From Euprymna scolopes (taxonomy: Eukaryota), in NCBI GenBank assembly GCA_053919585.1, contig CM132793.1: a stretch of 64,000 nucleotides of DNA; one strand, written 5' to 3'. The number at the start of each line of letters is the position of its first letter. The stretch's first letter is position 1. The translations under genes and the position numbers were made by a program. The notes below the pieces were generated by a model. It worked only from the letters and a program-made list of their open reading frames with translations. It was not told the DNA's origin and ran no database searches. Below, piece after piece: positions 4,757-29,279 of the stretch.

Positions 4757-6432
4757 GTTTTGATTTTTTTTTATTTTTTTTTATTTTTATTTTTTTTTTT
4801 TACTTTTTTGATTTTTTGTTTTGATTTTTTGTTTTGATTTTTTGTTTTGATTTTTTGTTTTGATTTTTTTTGTTTTGATTTTTTTTGTTTTGATTTTTTG
4901 TTTTGATTTTTTGTTTTGATTTTTTTTTGTTTTTTTTTTGTTTTGATTTTTTTTTGTTTTGATTTTTTTTGTTTGGAGTTTTTTTTTTTGATTTTTTTTT
5001 GAAACTCCAAACAAAAAAAACTCCAAACAAAAAAAACTCCAAACAAAAAAAACTCCAAACAATTTTTTTTTTGTTTGGAGTTTTTTTGTTTGGAGTTTTT
5101 TTGTTTGGAGTTTTTTTGTTTGGAGTTTTTTTGTTTGGAGTTTTTTTGTTTGGAGTTTTTTTGTTTGGAGTTTTTTTGTTTGGAGTTTTTTTGTTTGGAG
5201 TTTTTTTGTTTGGAGTTTTTTTGTTTGGAGTTTTTTTGTTTGGAGTTTTTTTGTTTGGAGTTTTTTTGTTTGGAGTTTTTTTGTTTGGAGTTTTTTTGTT
5301 TGGAGTTTTTTTGTTTGGAGTTTTTTTGTTTGGAGTTTTTTTGTTTGGAGTTTTTTTGTTTGGAGTTTTTTTGTTTGGAGTTTTTTTGTTTGGAGTTTTT
5401 TTGTTTGGAGTTTTTTTGTTTGGAGTTTTTTTGTTTGGAGTTTTTTTGTTTGGAGTTTTTTTGTTTGGAGTTTTTTTGTTTGGAGTTTTTTTGTTTGGAG
5501 TTTTTTTGTTTGGAGTTTTTTTGTTTGGAGTTTTTTTGTTTGGAGTTTTTTTGTTTGGAGTTTTTTTGTTTGGAGTTTTTTTGTTTGGAGTTTTTTTGTT
5601 TGGAGTTTTTTTGTTTGGAGTTTTTTTGTTTGGAGTTTTTTTGTTTGGAGTTTTTTTGTTTGGAGTTTTTTTGTTTGGAGTTTTTTTGTTTGGAGTTTTT
5701 TTGTTTGGAGTTTTTTTGTTTGGAGTTTTTTTGTTTGGAGTTTTTTTGTTTGGAGTTTTTTTGTTTGGAGTTTTTTTGTTTGGAGTTTTTTTGTTTGGAG
5801 TTTTTTTGTTTGGAGTTTTTTTGTTTGGAGTTTTTTTGTTTGGAGTTTTTTTGTTTGGAGTTTTTTTGTTTGGAGTTTTTTTGTTTGGAGTTTTTTTGTT
5901 TGGAGTTTTTTTGTTTGGAGTTTTTTTGTTTGGAGTTTTTTTGTTTGGAGTTTTTTTGTTTGGAGTTTTTTTGTTTGGAGTTTTTTTGTTTGGAGTTTTT
6001 TTGTTTGGAGTTTTTTTGTTTGGAGTTTTTTTGTTTGGAGTTTTTTTGTTTGGAGTTTTTTTGTTTGGAGTTTTTTTGTTTGGAGTTTTTTTGTTTGGAG
6101 TTTTTTTGTTTGGAGTTTTTTTGTTTGGAGTTTTTTTGTTTGGAGTTTTTTTGTTTGGAGTTTTTTTGTTTGGAGTTTTTTTGTTTGGAGTTTTTTTGTT
6201 TGGAGTTTTTTTGTTTGGAGTTTTTTTGTTTGGAGTTTTTTTGTTTGGAGTTTTTTTGTTTGGAGTTTTTTTGTTTGGAGTTTTTTTGTTTGGAGTTTTT
6301 TTGTTTGGAGTTTTTTTGTTTGGAGTTTTTTTGTTTGGAGTTTTTTTGTTTGGAGTTTTTTTGTTTGGAGTTTTTTTGTTTGGAGTTTTTTTGTTTGGAG
6401 TTTTTTTGTTTGGAGTTTTTTTGTTTTTTTTT
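4757..6432. repeat. T-rich tandem array: degenerate TTTTTGTTTTGA units, 4 inverted CTCCAAACA(n) units, then 90 perfect TTGTTTGGAGTTTTT units
   Basis: Exact 15-bp period over 5071-6420 (1350 bp). Inverted 16-bp units at 5005-5062. Degenerate units at 4757-4990. Confidence 0.98.
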
Positions 6433-6441
6433 CATGTTAAG

Positions 6442-6599
6442 CCAAGAAACGGTGTAATGATCCAAATATAGACAATACATTCTTTTTAAATGAAACATAT
6501 TTGGCGCTAAATGTGTTCCTCTCAACTGAATGCAATTGCCCAAAAGGAACGACTATCAAGCAACCTGCGTTACAGAATAGAAATCCCCGAATCAATTAA
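6442..6599 (+). CDS. Candidate terminal exon C ((A)KKRCNDPNIDNTFFLNETYLALNVFLSTECNCPKGTTIKQPALQNRNPRIN*)
   Basis: Acceptor ttttttttttcatgttaAG (AAG is less common). Open 52-codon frame needs phase 1, matching exon B. Stop TAA at 6597-6599. Confidence 0.4.
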
Positions 6600-8159
6600 T
6601 CTACAGATACGGCATAGTCTAGTCTCTACATGCATCAATTACTCAGTGCATAAATGTGCTTATATATTATAAAGTGTATACTGTTGCTACTATTGCGAGA
6701 ATGTTACTGAGGTTGGAATCAGTATTTAAGTAAACCAGCGCTTAATAACCAATACGGGAAGGATGCTGGATTTGTTCAGTCTTAATTAGTTCAACGCTTA
6801 CGTAGTTACGTTATGCTGTAGCAAAATATCTCCAGTGCTCACATATTTTGAATTCTATTTAGGTTAGAGCATGAAAAGATTTTTGTCGATCAAAGTGAAT
6901 TTGTTGATTCTCAAACTATTCCTGAAGTTTCAAGGAGATAGTACTTCAAAGGAAGCAAAAGGGGAAATGTTGATTCTTTTGCACTCAAGCATTGATTAAG
7001 TTAATTTAGAAACTCGACTCATAATATTAGATTCGGCACATCTTCCATTGTTCTACATGGAAAATTTATTATGAAACTATAATCCAGAGCGATTAGCACA
7101 CATTTAATTATACAACACATCTCTATTATAAATCTTTTTTGTAGTCAATTAAATTATATGTAGCAAGTGATTCATTTTAAAATAAATTAAAATGTTCACT
7201 AAATGATTTTCATTAAAAAAAAAACACTCCACCCAAGTTAAAAATAACTTCATATATAAATCTGATAAGGAATAGTAACTGTCGATCCCCTTCAAAATCA
7301 CAAGTATGCACATGTCACGGTTTTAGGTAAACTTGGAGTTGCAATCATTTTAAATGGTTTCACAGATTGTTTTAAAAAAATTGAACCGAAAAATGCCATT
7401 TAACGGAGAATTGAATAATTATAGCATCCTTTTTACAACGAATGTATTTGATACAAATAAACTTCAGTTTATGTATAAGTGCGACAGTAAATTTCATATA
7501 ACAAATTTTACGTCATTAATTTTGTAAAGAACGCAGTTTTGCATTAAAATCATATTTGCGTTAGAGATCCAAAATAACACTGACCTCTATTTACTTACCC
7601 TTATTTGTAATGGCTATTGTAACTTCAGAAATACTTTAGAGTGTCTTAATAGATTTTCTTAAGGATAAGCACAGATAACATGAGTGATAATTAAGGAGCT
7701 CAGTGTCATACTATTACGATGATTAGCAACGTGTTTTATCGAAGATTAAAACAAATAATCGGATATTCGTAGTTGAAAAATGAAAACCTGATATAGATCG
7801 AAAAAATTGTTTAGGTTGCAGAATTTATGGAATTTTATTTATGATTTTATGCCTGGTATTTTTGGGGATGCGGGGTCGCCCTATACTAACTAGGGTCCAA
7901 TCTTGTGATTCCAAATTCTTAGCCTTTCTGAAGACAGGGTTTTCATTCAAGTAAAAACCATATTTGAATGAAGCAAAAACTTCACATTTTTACTCTTTCT
8001 CCGTATATAATCGTCAGCATACAAACTATACTAAATTTTCCAGAAATTAAAGTTGTTCGTTCCTCACTCCTACTATTGCTAACAATAGCAACAAGACATA
8101 ACATACACAATTGCAGAAACAATATCTGAACCTTATTCGTTGCGTTTCGGAAAATATTT

Positions 8160-18329: not shown

Positions 18330-19092
18330 ATTCTCTAATCCAATACCAAGCTTCTATCTTTATATCATCAACGTTCTGATTCCCATCTGGCAGCAATTGA
18401 AATCGATGGCTCTCGTCTTGCGGAGGCTCAATGTTTTGACAAGCTTCTTGGTTTGACCTTTACTCCTAATCTGAAATGGAACACGTACATCAAGTCTGTT
18501 GCCAAGGACGCTGAGAAAATGGTGGGATCCTTCTACCGCTCCAGAAAATATCTCACTACTGATGAAATTATCTATCTGTATAAAAGTCAAGTACGTCCAA
18601 GGATGGAGTACTGCTGCCACATCTGGGCAGGAGTTGCTAAAATCAGCATATCCTGCCTTGACAGAGTACAAAATAGACTTCGTATCTTAGTGGGGGGATG
18701 CCCTTTTCTCTTCCCTGCAGCCTCTCACAGAAGAGACATTGCGAGCCTGCCTTTTTTTAGCGTAATTTCCATGGCAAGTGCTGGTCTGAGCTCCAATCTC
18801 TGATCCGCCCTCGCCAATCTTTCACGAAAAACACCCGTCTAGCAGAAACTCTCATTAATTTTCCTCACTCTTTATCTATGCCTTAATACAAACGTAGATT
18901 CCATGACCAGAGCTTTCTTAGAAGTGCACGATTGTGGAGCTCTCTTCCGTTTGCCTGTTTCCCACCTGACTATCAAATCAATACTCATGATTACTACGAT
19001 ACTATCCCATTGGTTACTGTACACGCAATAACCCTTATCACCGAGTGGCTTCCGGGCCTTGATAAGTGGTAACCTCCATGTAAAAAGAAAAA
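18330..19092 (+). mobile_element. CR1/L2-group LINE 3' fragment, family 2
   Basis: ORF 18453-18803 has VRPRMEYCCHIWAG..SHRRDIASL. 3'UTR ends ...CCTTGATAAGTGGTAACCTCCATGTAAAAAG. Confidence 0.9.
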
Positions 19093-26974: not shown

Positions 26975-27684
26975 GAAAAATATTTAGTTTAAAATTACGG
27001 CCTATTAAATTCTGCGTAATTCAATATTGAATCTCTCGATTTTGGTAAGTTTTCATCCTTAAAGTTCTAAATCATTCCAATATTGTTTATCGTGTAGATG
27101 AACTGTTTTGATTTTGCAGAATATGAGTTTCTTAAACCAAAAAGATTTGAATAGGTTTTCTTTTTGATCTCTTTTTAAATTTATATTTTGGTATTCATCA
27201 ATTCTGCCTTTTTTTGATTGAATAAATCAGATTAAGTAACAATATCAAATAAGTAAAGTAAATAAAATAGAATTAAAAATATTTGTATAAAAGAATTAAA
27301 ATACTATGCTAATGTGGGTGGCTTTTAAATAAACATGAATATTGTCACCAGGTAATCGGTCAAGGTTACGATAGGACAAAAGTTTGTAGATGTGATGTGT
27401 TTTCATATCCAATTATATGAACACTAATGCTTTTAAGTGTTAGTGTTGTACATGTCATAAAGTAGTGGAATCGGCAATGTTGTTGCAACTATATTCGATT
27501 CGAAAATTATAGGAAGCTTAGTTTATAAATTAGGTTATTTTAAACTTACAAGCGCATATAAAATAATTATCGATCTAAGATAACTCAATCAGTATTTTAG
27601 AAATACAATAACCTATGGTGACTTGACTAAAACGTCGACCTTTTTTTTTTAACTCCATACGCAAAATATTATAAATATAGTTAG

Positions 27685-28360
27685 GTTGGTTGGTTGTTTT
27701 TGTTTTACGGCATATCAACCCTTTTCAGGTTATTTAATGCCGAATCCAAAGATTTTCAAGAAAAAATTTTAATAGAATATATTTGTTGTTTTTAAGTCAG
27801 TTTCTATTTAACTCATAGTTGGAACCCTAACATGTACTACCACTCTGGGTCAGAGTGGACCTGGGAGCAATGGTAATTAAAGGGTGGCTCCACACTCCCC
27901 GAAGCCCACAAGCTGGGGCCTCACCATTGACTAACACTCTTTTGATGGGATGTCTCCTAGCGGCTTCGGCTGCATGGAGACAGGGTAGTACCAGTCAAGG
28001 ATTCGTCACTTGACACTCAGCCCAACAGGTGAGGGGCCGGGAACCGGCCCAGCACCTGTTGGACTGAGGTACACCGCCTGGGTAATACCTAGGAGGTCCA
28101 CCCTCCCAGGCCATGCCACCGGGCTTTCCGGTGGGGCAAGTTTATTGCTTGCTGCCTGAGGCGCCCCGACTGGGGAATGCCGACGCGGTTACTCAGGCAA
28201 TTTTTAAAATTGCAGGAGTGCCCCTCCTTTAGGGGAGCCTGCGGGGTTCCCACTTTCCGGCCTTGTGCCACATTTTGCTGAGGTGGGCAGCAAATAAATA
28301 TCTACCCTCTGCAGGGGGGGGCAGTCGGTCTATTCTAATGCCCCACCGACAGGGACAAAT
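27685..28360 (-). mobile_element. SINE-like element (LINE-shared ends) interrupted by a GC-rich insertion
   Basis: Body ACCACTCTGGGTCAGAGTGGACCTGGGAGCAATGG matches 37890-38125 in opposite orientation. Minus tail GATATGCCGTAAAACAAAAACAACCAACC. Confidence 0.8.
27951..28300 (+). other. GC-rich, highly structured insert (about 9 hairpins, UUCG loops, AAATAAATA tail), probable retroposed structured RNA
   Basis: Stems TGTCTCC/GGAGACA with GCGGC-TTCG-GCTGC; GTCAAG/CTTGAC; CTCAG.CCAACAGGTG/CACCTGTTGG.CTGAG; CCACCGG/CCGGTGG; TGCCTGAG/CTCAGGCA; TTTGCTG/CAGCAAA. Confidence 0.7.
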
Positions 28361-29279
28361 ATAGTTAAGCATGCATTAAAATATGGCGGTATGTACGCTT
28401 CAATCTTTTCCTCGTCACATGTGCTTAAATTGTACTCTTTCTGGGATAATTAATGAAGAAGTTTTTTATTTTTACTTTTAAAAGAAACTCATTTTATCCT
28501 CCACCTTTTCTTTTTCAATCTGAATAAATGAATATTTCTTAAAGATCTACTAGTCAGCCCATACCATTCAAAGAAACCAGCGCAATATGTACCATGAAGT
28601 CAATAAAATAATAGGCAGGTAATATAAATATACTTGTAGTATTGAAATTGTTTACTAATAATAGATGTATCAGCACTTTATTGATCTACTTATAGATAAT
28701 AAACATGAGAAAAATACCTACATTTTTTTTTAATTTTTCATATACTTTATACACTTATAACGTTGATATAAAATAAGGATTTGTTCATTCAGTAAAAATA
28801 GGTGGAATACTCGGTAGAATGGGTAAGTTGAAAAAATGATCTCTCAATACATTGAACCAGGTTAAGAGGGGAAGACTTAACGTTCCGGGTGAGACATGTG
28901 ACTAGATGAAACGTCCAGATAATTAACAGCTCTATGTATGTGGAAAACGTTTTGTATCAGACTTTTTAAAATTCGAAAGAAATACATGATTGTGACATGT
29001 GTGGCTGCCCGTGAAATTGTGAAGAAAAAGTTGCACAATTTCCTGTCGCACTCTTCTCTGGAGTCGACATTGGCGGATTCCAATGGCAAGAAGATTGGAA
29101 TATAGAAATAAGCGAGGAGCACATAATATTTGGAAATGGTCAATCTGATACTGGCCAGCCTTACCATAGCATAACTTATCATGTTAAGTGTTTTTAACTT
29201 TTAAATTCAGGTGAACATCTTTCGGCTAAAACAAAGATATTAACCGAAATAAGCACTACCGGAATCAACATTTCCGTCA

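What the first reader, a model, noticed from the sequence alone, without database searches (positions are those of the whole stretch)
27951..28300. Unidentified ~340-nt highly structured RNA module retroposed into a SINE
Seen: an abrupt GC-rich island that is almost entirely hairpins, with two UUCG tetraloops (one cUUCGg), a 15-bp stem capped by GGCCGG-GAA-CCGGCC, and multibranch stems. Several pairs are G-U on the plus strand (GCGGC/GCTGC, CCTGGGT/ACCTAGG, CTCCTT/GGGGAG) and would be A-C on the minus strand, so the plus strand is the likely RNA. It ends TTCCGGCCTTG..hairpin..AAATAAATA, echoing the CR1/L2 3' motif TTCCGGGCCTTG at 19049. It has no convincing ORF and I recognise no tRNA, 5S or 7SL head. 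Inference: a structured ncRNA or unusual retroposon mobilised by the CR1/L2 RT, possibly with a ribozyme or IRES-like fold.
Basis: partly seen in the sequence, partly recalled or inferred. Interest (0 to 1): 0.75.

Follow-up and report, generated by a model that had tools for sequence, protein, structure and literature searches.

The report
Copia LTR repeat unit captured by SINE
The GC-rich, hairpin-packed 380-base island is real, but it is one unit of a tandem repeat that normally sits inside the long terminal repeats of two young Ty1/copia jumping-gene families of this mollusc genome. A SINE picked it up during reverse transcription, so it is an unusual transposon part rather than a new RNA gene or ribozyme.

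Summary
Window 27924-28307 is a 57-60% GC island in roughly 30% GC DNA.

The interpretation changes. The island is one copy, 99% identical to consensus, of a 382-bp unit found at 1,200 or more places in this 5.9-Gb genome. The unit usually forms arrays of 1-5 or more head-to-tail copies, 16-21 bp inside the 5' end (U3) of the LTRs of two related Ty1/copia families. Those families show a 5-bp TSD, a PBS complementary to nt 25-39 of initiator tRNA-Met, a polypurine tract, and gag-IN-RT order. Many of their LTRs carry no unit.

In the window the unit lies inside a Ceph-SINE-like element on the minus strand, flanked by an 11-bp TSD. It replaces about 50 nt of SINE at short microhomologies. The best explanation is reverse-transcriptase template switching between SINE RNA and copia RNA.

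No Rfam family matches, ribozymes included. The CR1/L2 echo is an 11-nt chance match. Two hairpins show compensatory changes, so some structure is maintained, but the strand and function remain open.

An earlier scan found hammerhead retrozymes elsewhere in this genome. It did not find this unit.

The parts
27673..27683 (.). Left copy of the 11-bp target-site duplication AAATATAGTTA of the SINE insertion
   Evidence: An exact repeat lies at 28357-28367. It abuts the SINE tail.
27684..28356 (-). Chimeric SINE (Ceph-SINE-like) on the minus strand. Its 5' end is at 28356 and its (AACC)n tail at 27684-27696. About 50 nt of SINE are replaced by the 382-bp unit.
   Evidence: More than 3,000 candidate copies at 92-96% identity. 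Canonical copies have about 44 nt where the window has the unit, a precise ...CAGGGCC(A) end, a variable (GGTT)n end and 10-13-bp TSDs.
27803..27825 (-). 18/23 match to the RTE-like 23-mer quoted for the Ceph-SINE core domain
   Evidence: against the 23-mer printed in PMC5786205.
27924..28307 (-). One copy of the 382-bp GC-rich unit. It is 378/382 identical to the consensus of 62 genomic units.
27940..27949 (.). 3' arm (TTTTGATGGG) of the unit-junction hairpin. In arrays it pairs with CCCCATYAAAA of the preceding unit or of the LTR. In the window the 5' arm is only partly present (27924-27932).
27951..27982 (.). Stem-loop with the cUUCGg tetraloop
28016..28068 (.). Long hairpin, 10 bp + 2x2 internal loop + 7 bp, GAA loop. 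It has a C/A mismatch on plus that becomes a U-G pair on minus.
   Evidence: Weak miRNA-like Rfam hits here only reflect the hairpin shape.
28274..28294 (.). Terminal 7-bp hairpin (TTTGCTG/CAGCAAA) with compensatory changes between unit subfamilies
   Evidence: UA to AU at two pairs and UA to CG at one pair.
28293..28298 (+). AATAAA hexamer at the plus-strand end of the unit. It is AUUAAA in one subfamily and lost in another.
28308..28356 (-). 5' segment of the SINE, resuming exactly after the unit at ...ACCC|TCTGCAGG
28357..28367 (.). Right copy of the 11-bp target-site duplication

Best explanation
The island is one unit of a 382-bp GC-rich, hairpin-rich tandem repeat. Its normal home is the U3 end of the LTRs of two related, recently active Ty1/copia retrotransposon families, called LTR-A and LTR-B here. 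In copia sense, an LTR with no units reads TGTTGCAATATTTTGG, then a 1-5 nt variable linker, then TTAATGGGGTATGA and the rest of U3-R-U5. Each unit ends in the same TAATGGGGTA motif. The units therefore travel in the 3' part of the copia genomic RNA, just downstream of the polypurine tract. Their number changes, down to zero, as expected when reverse transcriptase slips on direct repeats (inferred). The window copy arose when a reverse transcriptase copying a SINE RNA jumped onto a unit-bearing RNA of the same polarity at a short homology (UGG, within the shared AAUGGGG motif). It copied one full unit and jumped back at GGGUA. The chimeric cDNA was fixed by target-primed insertion with an 11-bp TSD (inferred from the junctions). 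What the unit does for the copia elements is not shown. My ranking is: a cis-acting RNA structure in the 3' region of the genomic RNA for export, stability or packaging, about 35%; a DNA-level U3 repeat or passenger whose palindromes are kept by mutation mechanics, about 30%; a source of an antisense LTR transcript, about 15%; other, about 20%. The confidence given applies to the identity and arrival claims, not to the function ranking.
For: Distribution of the unit:
- It occurs at 95-99% identity on many chromosomes, period 382, in arrays. Unit-only search gives 1,212 candidate places.
- Arrays are always bounded by one of two conserved flanks. Flank A is 296 bp plus a 16-nt tail and also exists without units (9 of 11 sampled copies). 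Two of four sampled B copies also lack units.

Evidence that the flanks are copia LTRs:
- L071 holds two A copies 4.2 kb apart with a 5-bp TSD (CCTGT) and the same linker (taggt) in both.
- The internal ORF fragments hit Retrotran_gag_2, zf-CCHC, gag_pre-integrs, rve and RVT_2 in copia order, on the strand opposite to the unit's reader orientation.
- L078 shows the same layout for B: TGT...ACA termini and a polypurine tract.
- The sequence after the 5' LTR in both families is complementary to nt 25-39 of this genome's own tRNA-Met(CAT). This is the priming mode reported for Drosophila copia and Ty5, and 5-bp TSDs are the Copia rule (PMC10886601).
- Solo LTRs show 5-6-bp TSDs.

Evidence for capture by the SINE:
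- The window SINE runs on the minus strand with an 11-bp TSD.
- A second chimera, L002, has its own 14-bp TSD. Its SINE parts are 92-93% identical to the window's, but its unit is 98.6% identical. This points to separate captures at the same site.

Evidence for maintained structure:
- z is about -6.5 on both strands.
- Six pairs carry double-sided changes, giving 17 such cells against 4.4 +/- 1.6 in shuffles (0 of 500 as high), and slid controls score lower.
- Subfamily-level variants fall mostly in unpaired columns: 24 of 36, where 36% of columns are unpaired.
Against: - No transcript data exist, so U3, TSS and poly(A) assignments are positional inferences.
- LTR-A ends ...CTAGA rather than the usual ...CA.
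- Template switching is inferred from microhomologies. A DNA-level recombination would leave the same junctions.
- L020 has the unit in the opposite polarity relative to a copia pol fragment and a LINE fragment. This needs either a plus-polarity unit RNA or a DNA rearrangement.
- The compensatory changes could come from quasi-palindrome template-switch mutation rather than selection. The aligned sequences are related, so the shuffle control is not a probability.
- G-U counts (14 plus, 8 minus) lean toward the strand that is antisense to copia. That fits the RNA cis-element idea poorly unless it reflects G-to-A mutation bias.
- Only about 80 loci were inspected out of thousands.
Confidence: 0.8

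Rival explanations
1. The unit is a self-contained antisense RNA gene nested in the LTR. A bidirectional LTR promoter (inverted CCAAT, then TATA 31 nt before TCA+1TACCCC) drives a roughly 385-nt structured plus-strand RNA. This RNA starts at AUACCCC and ends after the unit's AAUAAA near UACCC.
For: - In both otherwise poorly alignable LTRs, the TATA-like block and TCATACCCCATYAA lie at an identical 31-nt spacing, with an NF-Y-type CTGATTGG upstream.
- Every unit ends AAUAAA or AUUAAA, followed by UAUCUACCC.
- Four isolated copies all end at ...ATCTACCC(C), and one (L024) starts at ATACCCC.
- L020 is most simply read as a cDNA that used a plus-polarity unit RNA.
- More G-U pairs fall on plus.
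Against: - The first roughly 40 nt of the two LTRs are homologous, so the shared spacing may be inherited rather than a sign of promoter function.
- One subfamily has lost the hexamer while keeping the hairpin.
- The minus strand also carries an AAUAAA.
- The SINE chimeras need the minus polarity.
- No expression data.
Confidence: 0.15
2. The unit is a DNA-level U3 tandem repeat (an enhancer block or plain satellite-like passenger) with no RNA function. Its hairpins are inverted repeats kept perfect by template-switch correction during reverse transcription.
For: - Both strands fold equally well.
- Unit number varies from 0 to 5 or more, and LTRs without units are at least as successful.
- Tandem repeats in U3 or 3' regions of LTR elements are common (general knowledge).
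- The junction tip and the LTR linker are hypervariable at the same spot whether or not pairing is possible.
Against: - Base composition and fold z-score are extreme for an enhancer.
- Subfamily variants avoid paired columns, and three different terminal-stem states all stay complementary.
Confidence: 0.3
3. The unit is a retrozyme-like or viroid-like element: a unit-length, possibly circular RNA made by an unrecognised self-cleaving motif at the junction, reverse-transcribed by rolling circle into arrays.
For: - Head-to-tail arrays of a roughly 380-nt unit dispersed at 99% identity.
- A conserved-base, variable-tip hairpin sits exactly at the junction.
- Hammerhead retrozymes exist elsewhere in this genome (earlier notes).
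- Some copies lie next to (TA)n or (CA)n.
Against: - No hammerhead, HDV-like, twister, pistol, hatchet or hairpin ribozyme hit even at E up to 10 on native dimers, and no CUGANGA core on either strand by eye.
- GC is 57-60% against under 45-50% for animal retrozymes (PMC7229834).
- Arrays are not free-standing. They sit at one fixed site in LTRs that carry 5-bp TSDs.
- Units within an array differ by position, so the arrays are not products of one circle.
Confidence: 0.04
4. One reading: a structured ncRNA or unusual retroposon mobilised by a CR1/L2 reverse transcriptase through a shared 3' motif.
For: An 11-nt similarity (TTCCGG(G)CCTTG) to a site at 19049.
Against: - BLAST with word size 7 finds no extended similarity between the unit and anything else in the window.
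- The unit's genomic homes are copia LTRs.
- The host SINE has an (AACC)n tail and an RTE-like core.
Confidence: 0.02

Closest known systems
Ty1/copia LTR retrotransposons primed by the anticodon-stem fragment of initiator tRNA-Met (Drosophila copia, yeast Ty5)
   Same: The elements that carry the unit have LTRs, a 5-bp TSD, a PBS complementary to tRNA-iMet up to nt 39, a polypurine tract and gag-IN-RT order (PMC10886601).
   Different: Their LTRs hold an optional array of 382-bp GC-rich hairpin units 16-21 bp from the LTR 5' end. LTR-A ends ...CTAGA.
Tandem repeats in U3 or 3' untranslated regions of LTR retrotransposons, and structured 3' RNA elements of retroviruses and LTR elements (MPMV CTE, RSV direct repeats, MusD transport element), recalled from general knowledge and not tested
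   Same: A repeated, structured non-coding module lies between the polypurine tract and the promoter part of the LTR. Its copy number varies between copies.
   Different: There is no sequence relation. Function is untested here, both strands fold equally well, and the units are unusually long and GC-rich for the genome.
LTRs that carry small-RNA-derived modules (Cassandra 5S, Helenus tRNA-like, Ajax)
   Same: A foreign-looking structured module sits inside the LTRs of a mobile LTR element (PMC10886601).
   Different: Those modules are recognisable 5S or tRNA derivatives with pol III boxes in short non-autonomous TRIMs. This unit matches no Rfam family and sits in LTRs of elements with copia gag-pol.
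Animal non-LTR retrozymes (tandem ~170-400-bp units with type I hammerheads)
   Same: Similar unit length, head-to-tail arrays, young dispersed copies. Such elements are present in the same genome (PMC7229834).
   Different: No hammerhead or other known ribozyme, high GC, and arrays embedded at a fixed site in copia LTRs rather than inserted on their own.
Chimeric retrocopies made by reverse-transcriptase template switching (SINE or LINE chimeras)
   Same: A foreign segment replaces part of a SINE at microhomologies, and the whole is flanked by one TSD.
   Different: The donor is a copia LTR repeat unit. The same re-entry point was used in two apparently independent captures.

Membership tests
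Ty1/copia LTR retrotransposon (home of the unit) | Two direct LTRs flanking an internal region, with a 5-bp target-site duplication | tested here: met
   L071: LTRs at 408-~735 and 4958-~5270, TSD CCTGT. L078: LTRs at 1472-1720 and 6154-6402. Solo LTRs have 5-6-bp TSDs.
Ty1/copia LTR retrotransposon (home of the unit) | gag, then integrase, then reverse transcriptase (copia domain order) | tested here: met
   Pfam hits on the L071 minus strand in this order: Retrotran_gag_2 and zf-CCHC (5044-4205), Pol_BBD and gag_pre-integrs (3967-3623), rve (3577-3197), SH3_retrovirus (3193-2582), RVT_2 (2313-1868). The frames are broken by stops.
Ty1/copia LTR retrotransposon (home of the unit) | Primer-binding site next to the 5' LTR and polypurine tract next to the 3' LTR | tested here: met
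   A 15-nt exact complement of nt 25-39 of the genome's tRNA-Met(CAT) lies directly after both LTR types. AAAAAATAAGGAGGA (A) and CAAAAAGGGAG (B) lie directly before the 3' LTR.
Ty1/copia LTR retrotransposon (home of the unit) | LTR termini TG...CA | tested here: inconclusive
   LTR-B is TGT...ACA. LTR-A is TGTTG...CTAGA, so its 3' end is not CA.
Animal non-LTR retrozyme | Type I hammerhead ribozyme in every unit | tested here: not met
   No hammerhead hit in Rfam at gathering scores or at E up to 1-10 on single units and native arrays.
Animal non-LTR retrozyme | Free-standing tandem arrays of low GC content | tested here: not met
   Unit GC is 0.57. Of the loci recovered by the unit search, all except four isolated single-unit copies (the window copy, L002, L020, L024) are arrays inside LTR-A or LTR-B.
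Any curated RNA family (Rfam 15), including ribozymes, tRNA, 5S, 7SL, snRNA, IRES | Covariance-model match at or near the gathering score | tested here: not met
   0 matches at gathering scores in the whole window. Best sub-threshold hits are miRNA-like hairpin matches of 15-19 bits against cut-offs of 66-142.
CR1/L2 LINE 3' UTR module | Extended similarity to the 3' end of a CR1/L2 element | tested here: not met
   Only an 11-nt motif is shared with 19049. No alignment beyond chance in the window. Repbase and Dfam are not available.
SINE of the Ceph-SINE superfamily (host of the window copy) | Short non-autonomous retroposon with TSD, simple-repeat tail and the Ceph core domain | tested here: inconclusive
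   10-13-bp TSDs, an (AACC)n tail and more than 3,000 candidate copies. 18/23 match to the quoted RTE-like 23-mer. No tRNA-like head found by Rfam.
Cassandra/Helenus/Ajax-type LTRs | 5S- or tRNA-derived sequence with pol III boxes in the LTR | tested here: not met
   No 5S or tRNA match in unit-bearing LTR loci.

The most novel reading that the evidence does not exclude
The 382-nt unit is not just LTR cargo but an RNA entity of its own. It would be a stable, highly structured RNA transcribed from an antisense LTR promoter, or processed by an unrecognised junction motif. It would spread between unrelated retroelements (two copia LTR families, at least two SINE lineages, a LINE/copia chimera) by template switching at its CCCCAUYA/UGAUGGG junction hairpin. 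That would make it a hyperparasite of retrotransposons, or a copy-number-control RNA.
Probability: 0.1. Interest if true: 0.6.

Novelty: new variant of a known kind. Interest (0 to 1): 0.3.

Why it matters
The main value is correct annotation. A sequence that looks like an orphan structured RNA or ribozyme is explained as a module of very young Ty1/copia LTRs, and the window copy as a template-switch chimera in a SINE. Three smaller points may interest transposon biologists. First, copia LTRs here carry an optional, copy-number-variable array of long GC-rich hairpin units, with compensatory changes in two stems. Second, the same unit was captured repeatedly at one short motif. Third, a hypervariable spot lies 16 nt inside the LTR. 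If the unit proved to be a cis-acting RNA element or an antisense regulatory RNA, it would be a tractable case in an animal group (cephalopod-like mollusc) where transposon biology is little studied.

Tried and rejected
1. Penelope-like or retrozyme reading. It was prompted by the tandem arrays and nearby microsatellites. I dropped it after finding fixed 5-bp TSDs, LTR pairs and copia gag-pol.
2. Carriers A and B as SINE-like retroposons transcribed in the unit's plus orientation. This is wrong: the coding strand, PBS and PPT show the opposite orientation.
3. Tf1-like self-priming (TAATGGGG after the LTR pairing with CCCCATTA). I rejected this once that flank proved to be the PPT side. The complementarity remains as an unexplained stem bracketing the PPT.
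4. One search used the wrong flank of L014 and hit an unrelated repeat. Ignore it.
5. CR1/L2 echo: an 11-nt chance match.
6. Similarity between the unit and the copia internal region: none.
7. Exact-pattern scans of the metagenome and viral collections with the long-hairpin sequence: no match. Those collections hold little animal DNA.
8. Origin from rDNA spacers. This was not tested.
9. Strand call from G-U pairs and from variant placement: not decisive.
10. The search of earlier findings by sequence and by place returned nothing on this unit.

Full report
**Observation.** Window 27924-28307 is a sharp GC island (0.58-0.63 GC in 200-nt windows, against about 0.25-0.35 around it). These are a stem capped cUUCGg (27951-27982), a second UUCG loop, a 10+7-bp hairpin capped GGCCGG-GAA-CCGGCC (28016-28068), several further stems, and an AAATAAATA end. 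Folding 27951-28300 gives -177.9 kcal/mol on plus (z -6.49) and -170.6 on minus (z -6.55), with no shuffle as good on either strand. The structure is equally strong on both strands.

**What the island is a copy of.** Searching the window's own 5.9-Gb genome shows that positions 27933-28307 recur at 95-99% identity on many chromosomes. They mostly occur as head-to-tail arrays with a 382-bp period. A unit-only query gives 1,212 candidate places. The window copy is 378/382 identical to the consensus of 62 distinct units. Arrays of 1 to 5 units were seen among 26 distinct loci. Some run off the fetched DNA, so 5 is a lower bound for the largest arrays.

**The arrays sit in copia LTRs.** Every array has one of two conserved flanks.
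- Flank A (296 bp plus a 16-nt tail) also exists without any unit, in 9 of 11 sampled copies. It has 2,015 or more candidate places at 98-99% identity.
- Solo copies have 5-6-bp TSDs.
- In L071, two A copies lie 4.2 kb apart. They share the same 5-nt linker (taggt) and are flanked by the 5-bp TSD CCTGT.
- The internal region carries broken ORFs that hit Retrotran_gag_2 and zf-CCHC, then gag_pre-integrs, rve, SH3_retrovirus and RVT_2.
- L078 shows the same for flank B: LTRs of about 250 bp with TGT...ACA termini, and a polypurine tract before the 3' LTR.
- In both families, the 15 nt after the 5' LTR are the exact complement of nt 25-39 of this genome's own tRNA-Met(CAT) gene. This is the priming mode described for Drosophila copia and Ty5, and 5-bp TSDs are the Copia rule (PMC10886601).

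**Position and polarity of the units.** Read in copia sense, an LTR-A with no units begins TGTTGCAATATTTTGG, then a 1-5 nt linker, then TTAATGGGGTATGA. LTR-B begins with a homologous TGTAAAATGTTTTTGA-linker-TAATGGGGGTATGA. Unit-bearing LTRs hold the array between these two blocks, 16-21 nt from the LTR 5' end. By position that is U3. The copia genomic RNA therefore carries the units once, just after the polypurine tract, in the polarity that corresponds to the window's minus strand. The units in A and B are 98-99% identical although the rest of the two LTRs hardly aligns.

**How the window copy got there.**
- The surrounding 27684-28356 is a SINE on the minus strand. It has a precise 5' end (…GGCCCTGTCGG in SINE sense), an (AACC)n tail and an 11-bp TSD (AAATATAGTTA at 27673-27683 and 28357-28367).
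- The SINE carries an 18/23 match to the RTE-like 23-mer quoted for Ceph-SINEs. Rfam finds no tRNA head in it.
- Canonical copies have about 44 nt where the window has the unit. That stretch contains CCCCCATTGA, which resembles the unit/LTR motif CCCCATTAA.
- In SINE sense, the chimera leaves the SINE at UGG and re-enters at GGGUA. No LTR-terminal sequence is present.
- The simplest reading is template switching by a reverse transcriptase from SINE RNA to a unit-bearing RNA of the same polarity and back, followed by target-primed insertion. This is inferred, not shown.
- A second chimera (L002) has its own 14-bp TSD and the same re-entry point, but a different exit point. Its SINE parts are 92-93% identical to the window's while its unit is 98.6% identical. 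This argues for independent captures.
- Two other isolated units lie next to a LINE RT fragment plus a copia pol fragment (L020) and next to a mariner-like end (L024). L020 has the opposite polarity logic and remains unexplained.

**Is the structure maintained?**
- At each unit junction, CCCCAUYA...UGAUGGG forms a hairpin. Its base is conserved and its tip is replaced by many unrelated but self-complementary sequences.
- The terminal 7-bp hairpin exists in three mutually compensated states.
- On an alignment of 21 distinct junction segments, 96.6% of cells pair. Six pairs carry changes on both sides. The 17 such cells compare with 4.4 +/- 1.6 in shuffles (0 of 500 as high), and all slid controls are lower.
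- Variants shared by three or more units lie mostly in unpaired columns of the consensus fold: 24 of 36, where 36% of columns are unpaired.

Caveats apply. The sequences are related. Quasi-palindrome template switching can create compensatory changes without selection. The hypervariable spot also exists in LTRs with no units, where nothing pairs.

**Which strand?** This is unresolved. The plus fold has 14 G-U pairs and the minus fold has 8, and the energies are nearly equal. Plus carries AAUAAA or AUUAAA at the unit end, but one subfamily lost it, and minus has its own AAUAAA. In plus orientation both LTRs show an inverted CCAAT box, a TATA-like block and TCATACCCC exactly 31 nt later. This could be an antisense promoter, or just inherited spacing in homologous LTR ends.

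**Comparison with known things.**
- Rfam 15 gives nothing at gathering scores in the whole window. At E up to 10 it gives only weak miRNA-like hairpin hits, including on native dimers. No known ribozyme, tRNA, 5S, 7SL or IRES family is present.
- Animal retrozymes share the unit size and tandem habit, and earlier notes of this scan report them elsewhere in this genome. But they are defined by hammerheads, are AT-rich and stand alone (PMC7229834). None of these features is met here.
- Penelope-like elements were considered (PMC8557442) and excluded by the LTR, PBS, PPT and gag-pol evidence.
- The CR1/L2 echo is an 11-nt match.
- Exact-pattern scans of the metagenome and viral collections found nothing.

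**Verdict.** This is a real and unusual-looking sequence with an ordinary class of explanation: a copia LTR repeat unit captured by a SINE. What the unit does for its copia hosts is open. I rank a cis-acting RNA structure first (about 35%), a DNA-level repeat or passenger second (about 30%) and an antisense LTR transcript third (about 15%). A new ribozyme or circular RNA is unlikely (about 4%).

Noticed in passing
G000:C4:~4,110,600-4,134,600 and beyond (L079-L082): Very large head-to-tail array of initiator tRNA-Met(CAT) genes with a period of about 147 bp. A 20-mer from the anticodon arm occurs 1,238 times on one strand. ARAGORN confirms tRNA-Met(cat) in four consecutive repeats.
   Followed up: partly
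LTR-A and LTR-B copies, e.g. L071:703-735, L060-L069, L076-L078: A hypervariable 1-5-nt linker lies 16 nt inside the LTR 5' end. It differs between copies that are otherwise 98-99% identical, but is the same in the two LTRs of one element. The same spot is the variable tip of the unit-junction hairpin.
   Followed up: partly
L071:735-770 and L078:6120-6200: CCCCATTA (A) or CCATTA (B) just upstream of the polypurine tract is complementary to TAATGGGG just inside the 3' LTR. In the genomic RNA this stem would bracket the PPT and the LTR start.
   Followed up: no
L078:1-1464 and 6402-7600; L015:720-1300: LTR-B copies carry other tandem repeats: 52/104-bp repeats at the far end of the LTR, and roughly 155-bp arrays beside the LTRs in L078.
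   Followed up: no
L020 (G000:C16:24853190-24856564): One unit is sandwiched between a LINE reverse-transcriptase fragment and a copia pol fragment, all in the same sense. This may be a three-template chimeric cDNA or a rearrangement. The unit's polarity here is opposite to that in the LTRs.
   Followed up: partly
L014 downstream flank (query): An unrelated repeat family with about 4,900 candidate places at 80-85% identity lies next to one LTR-A copy. It was hit by mistake.
   Followed up: no
G000:C47 (many sites) and C46:128.70-128.74 Mb: 5.8S rRNA matches at about 14-15-kb spacing mark the rDNA arrays. They could not be fetched.
   Followed up: no
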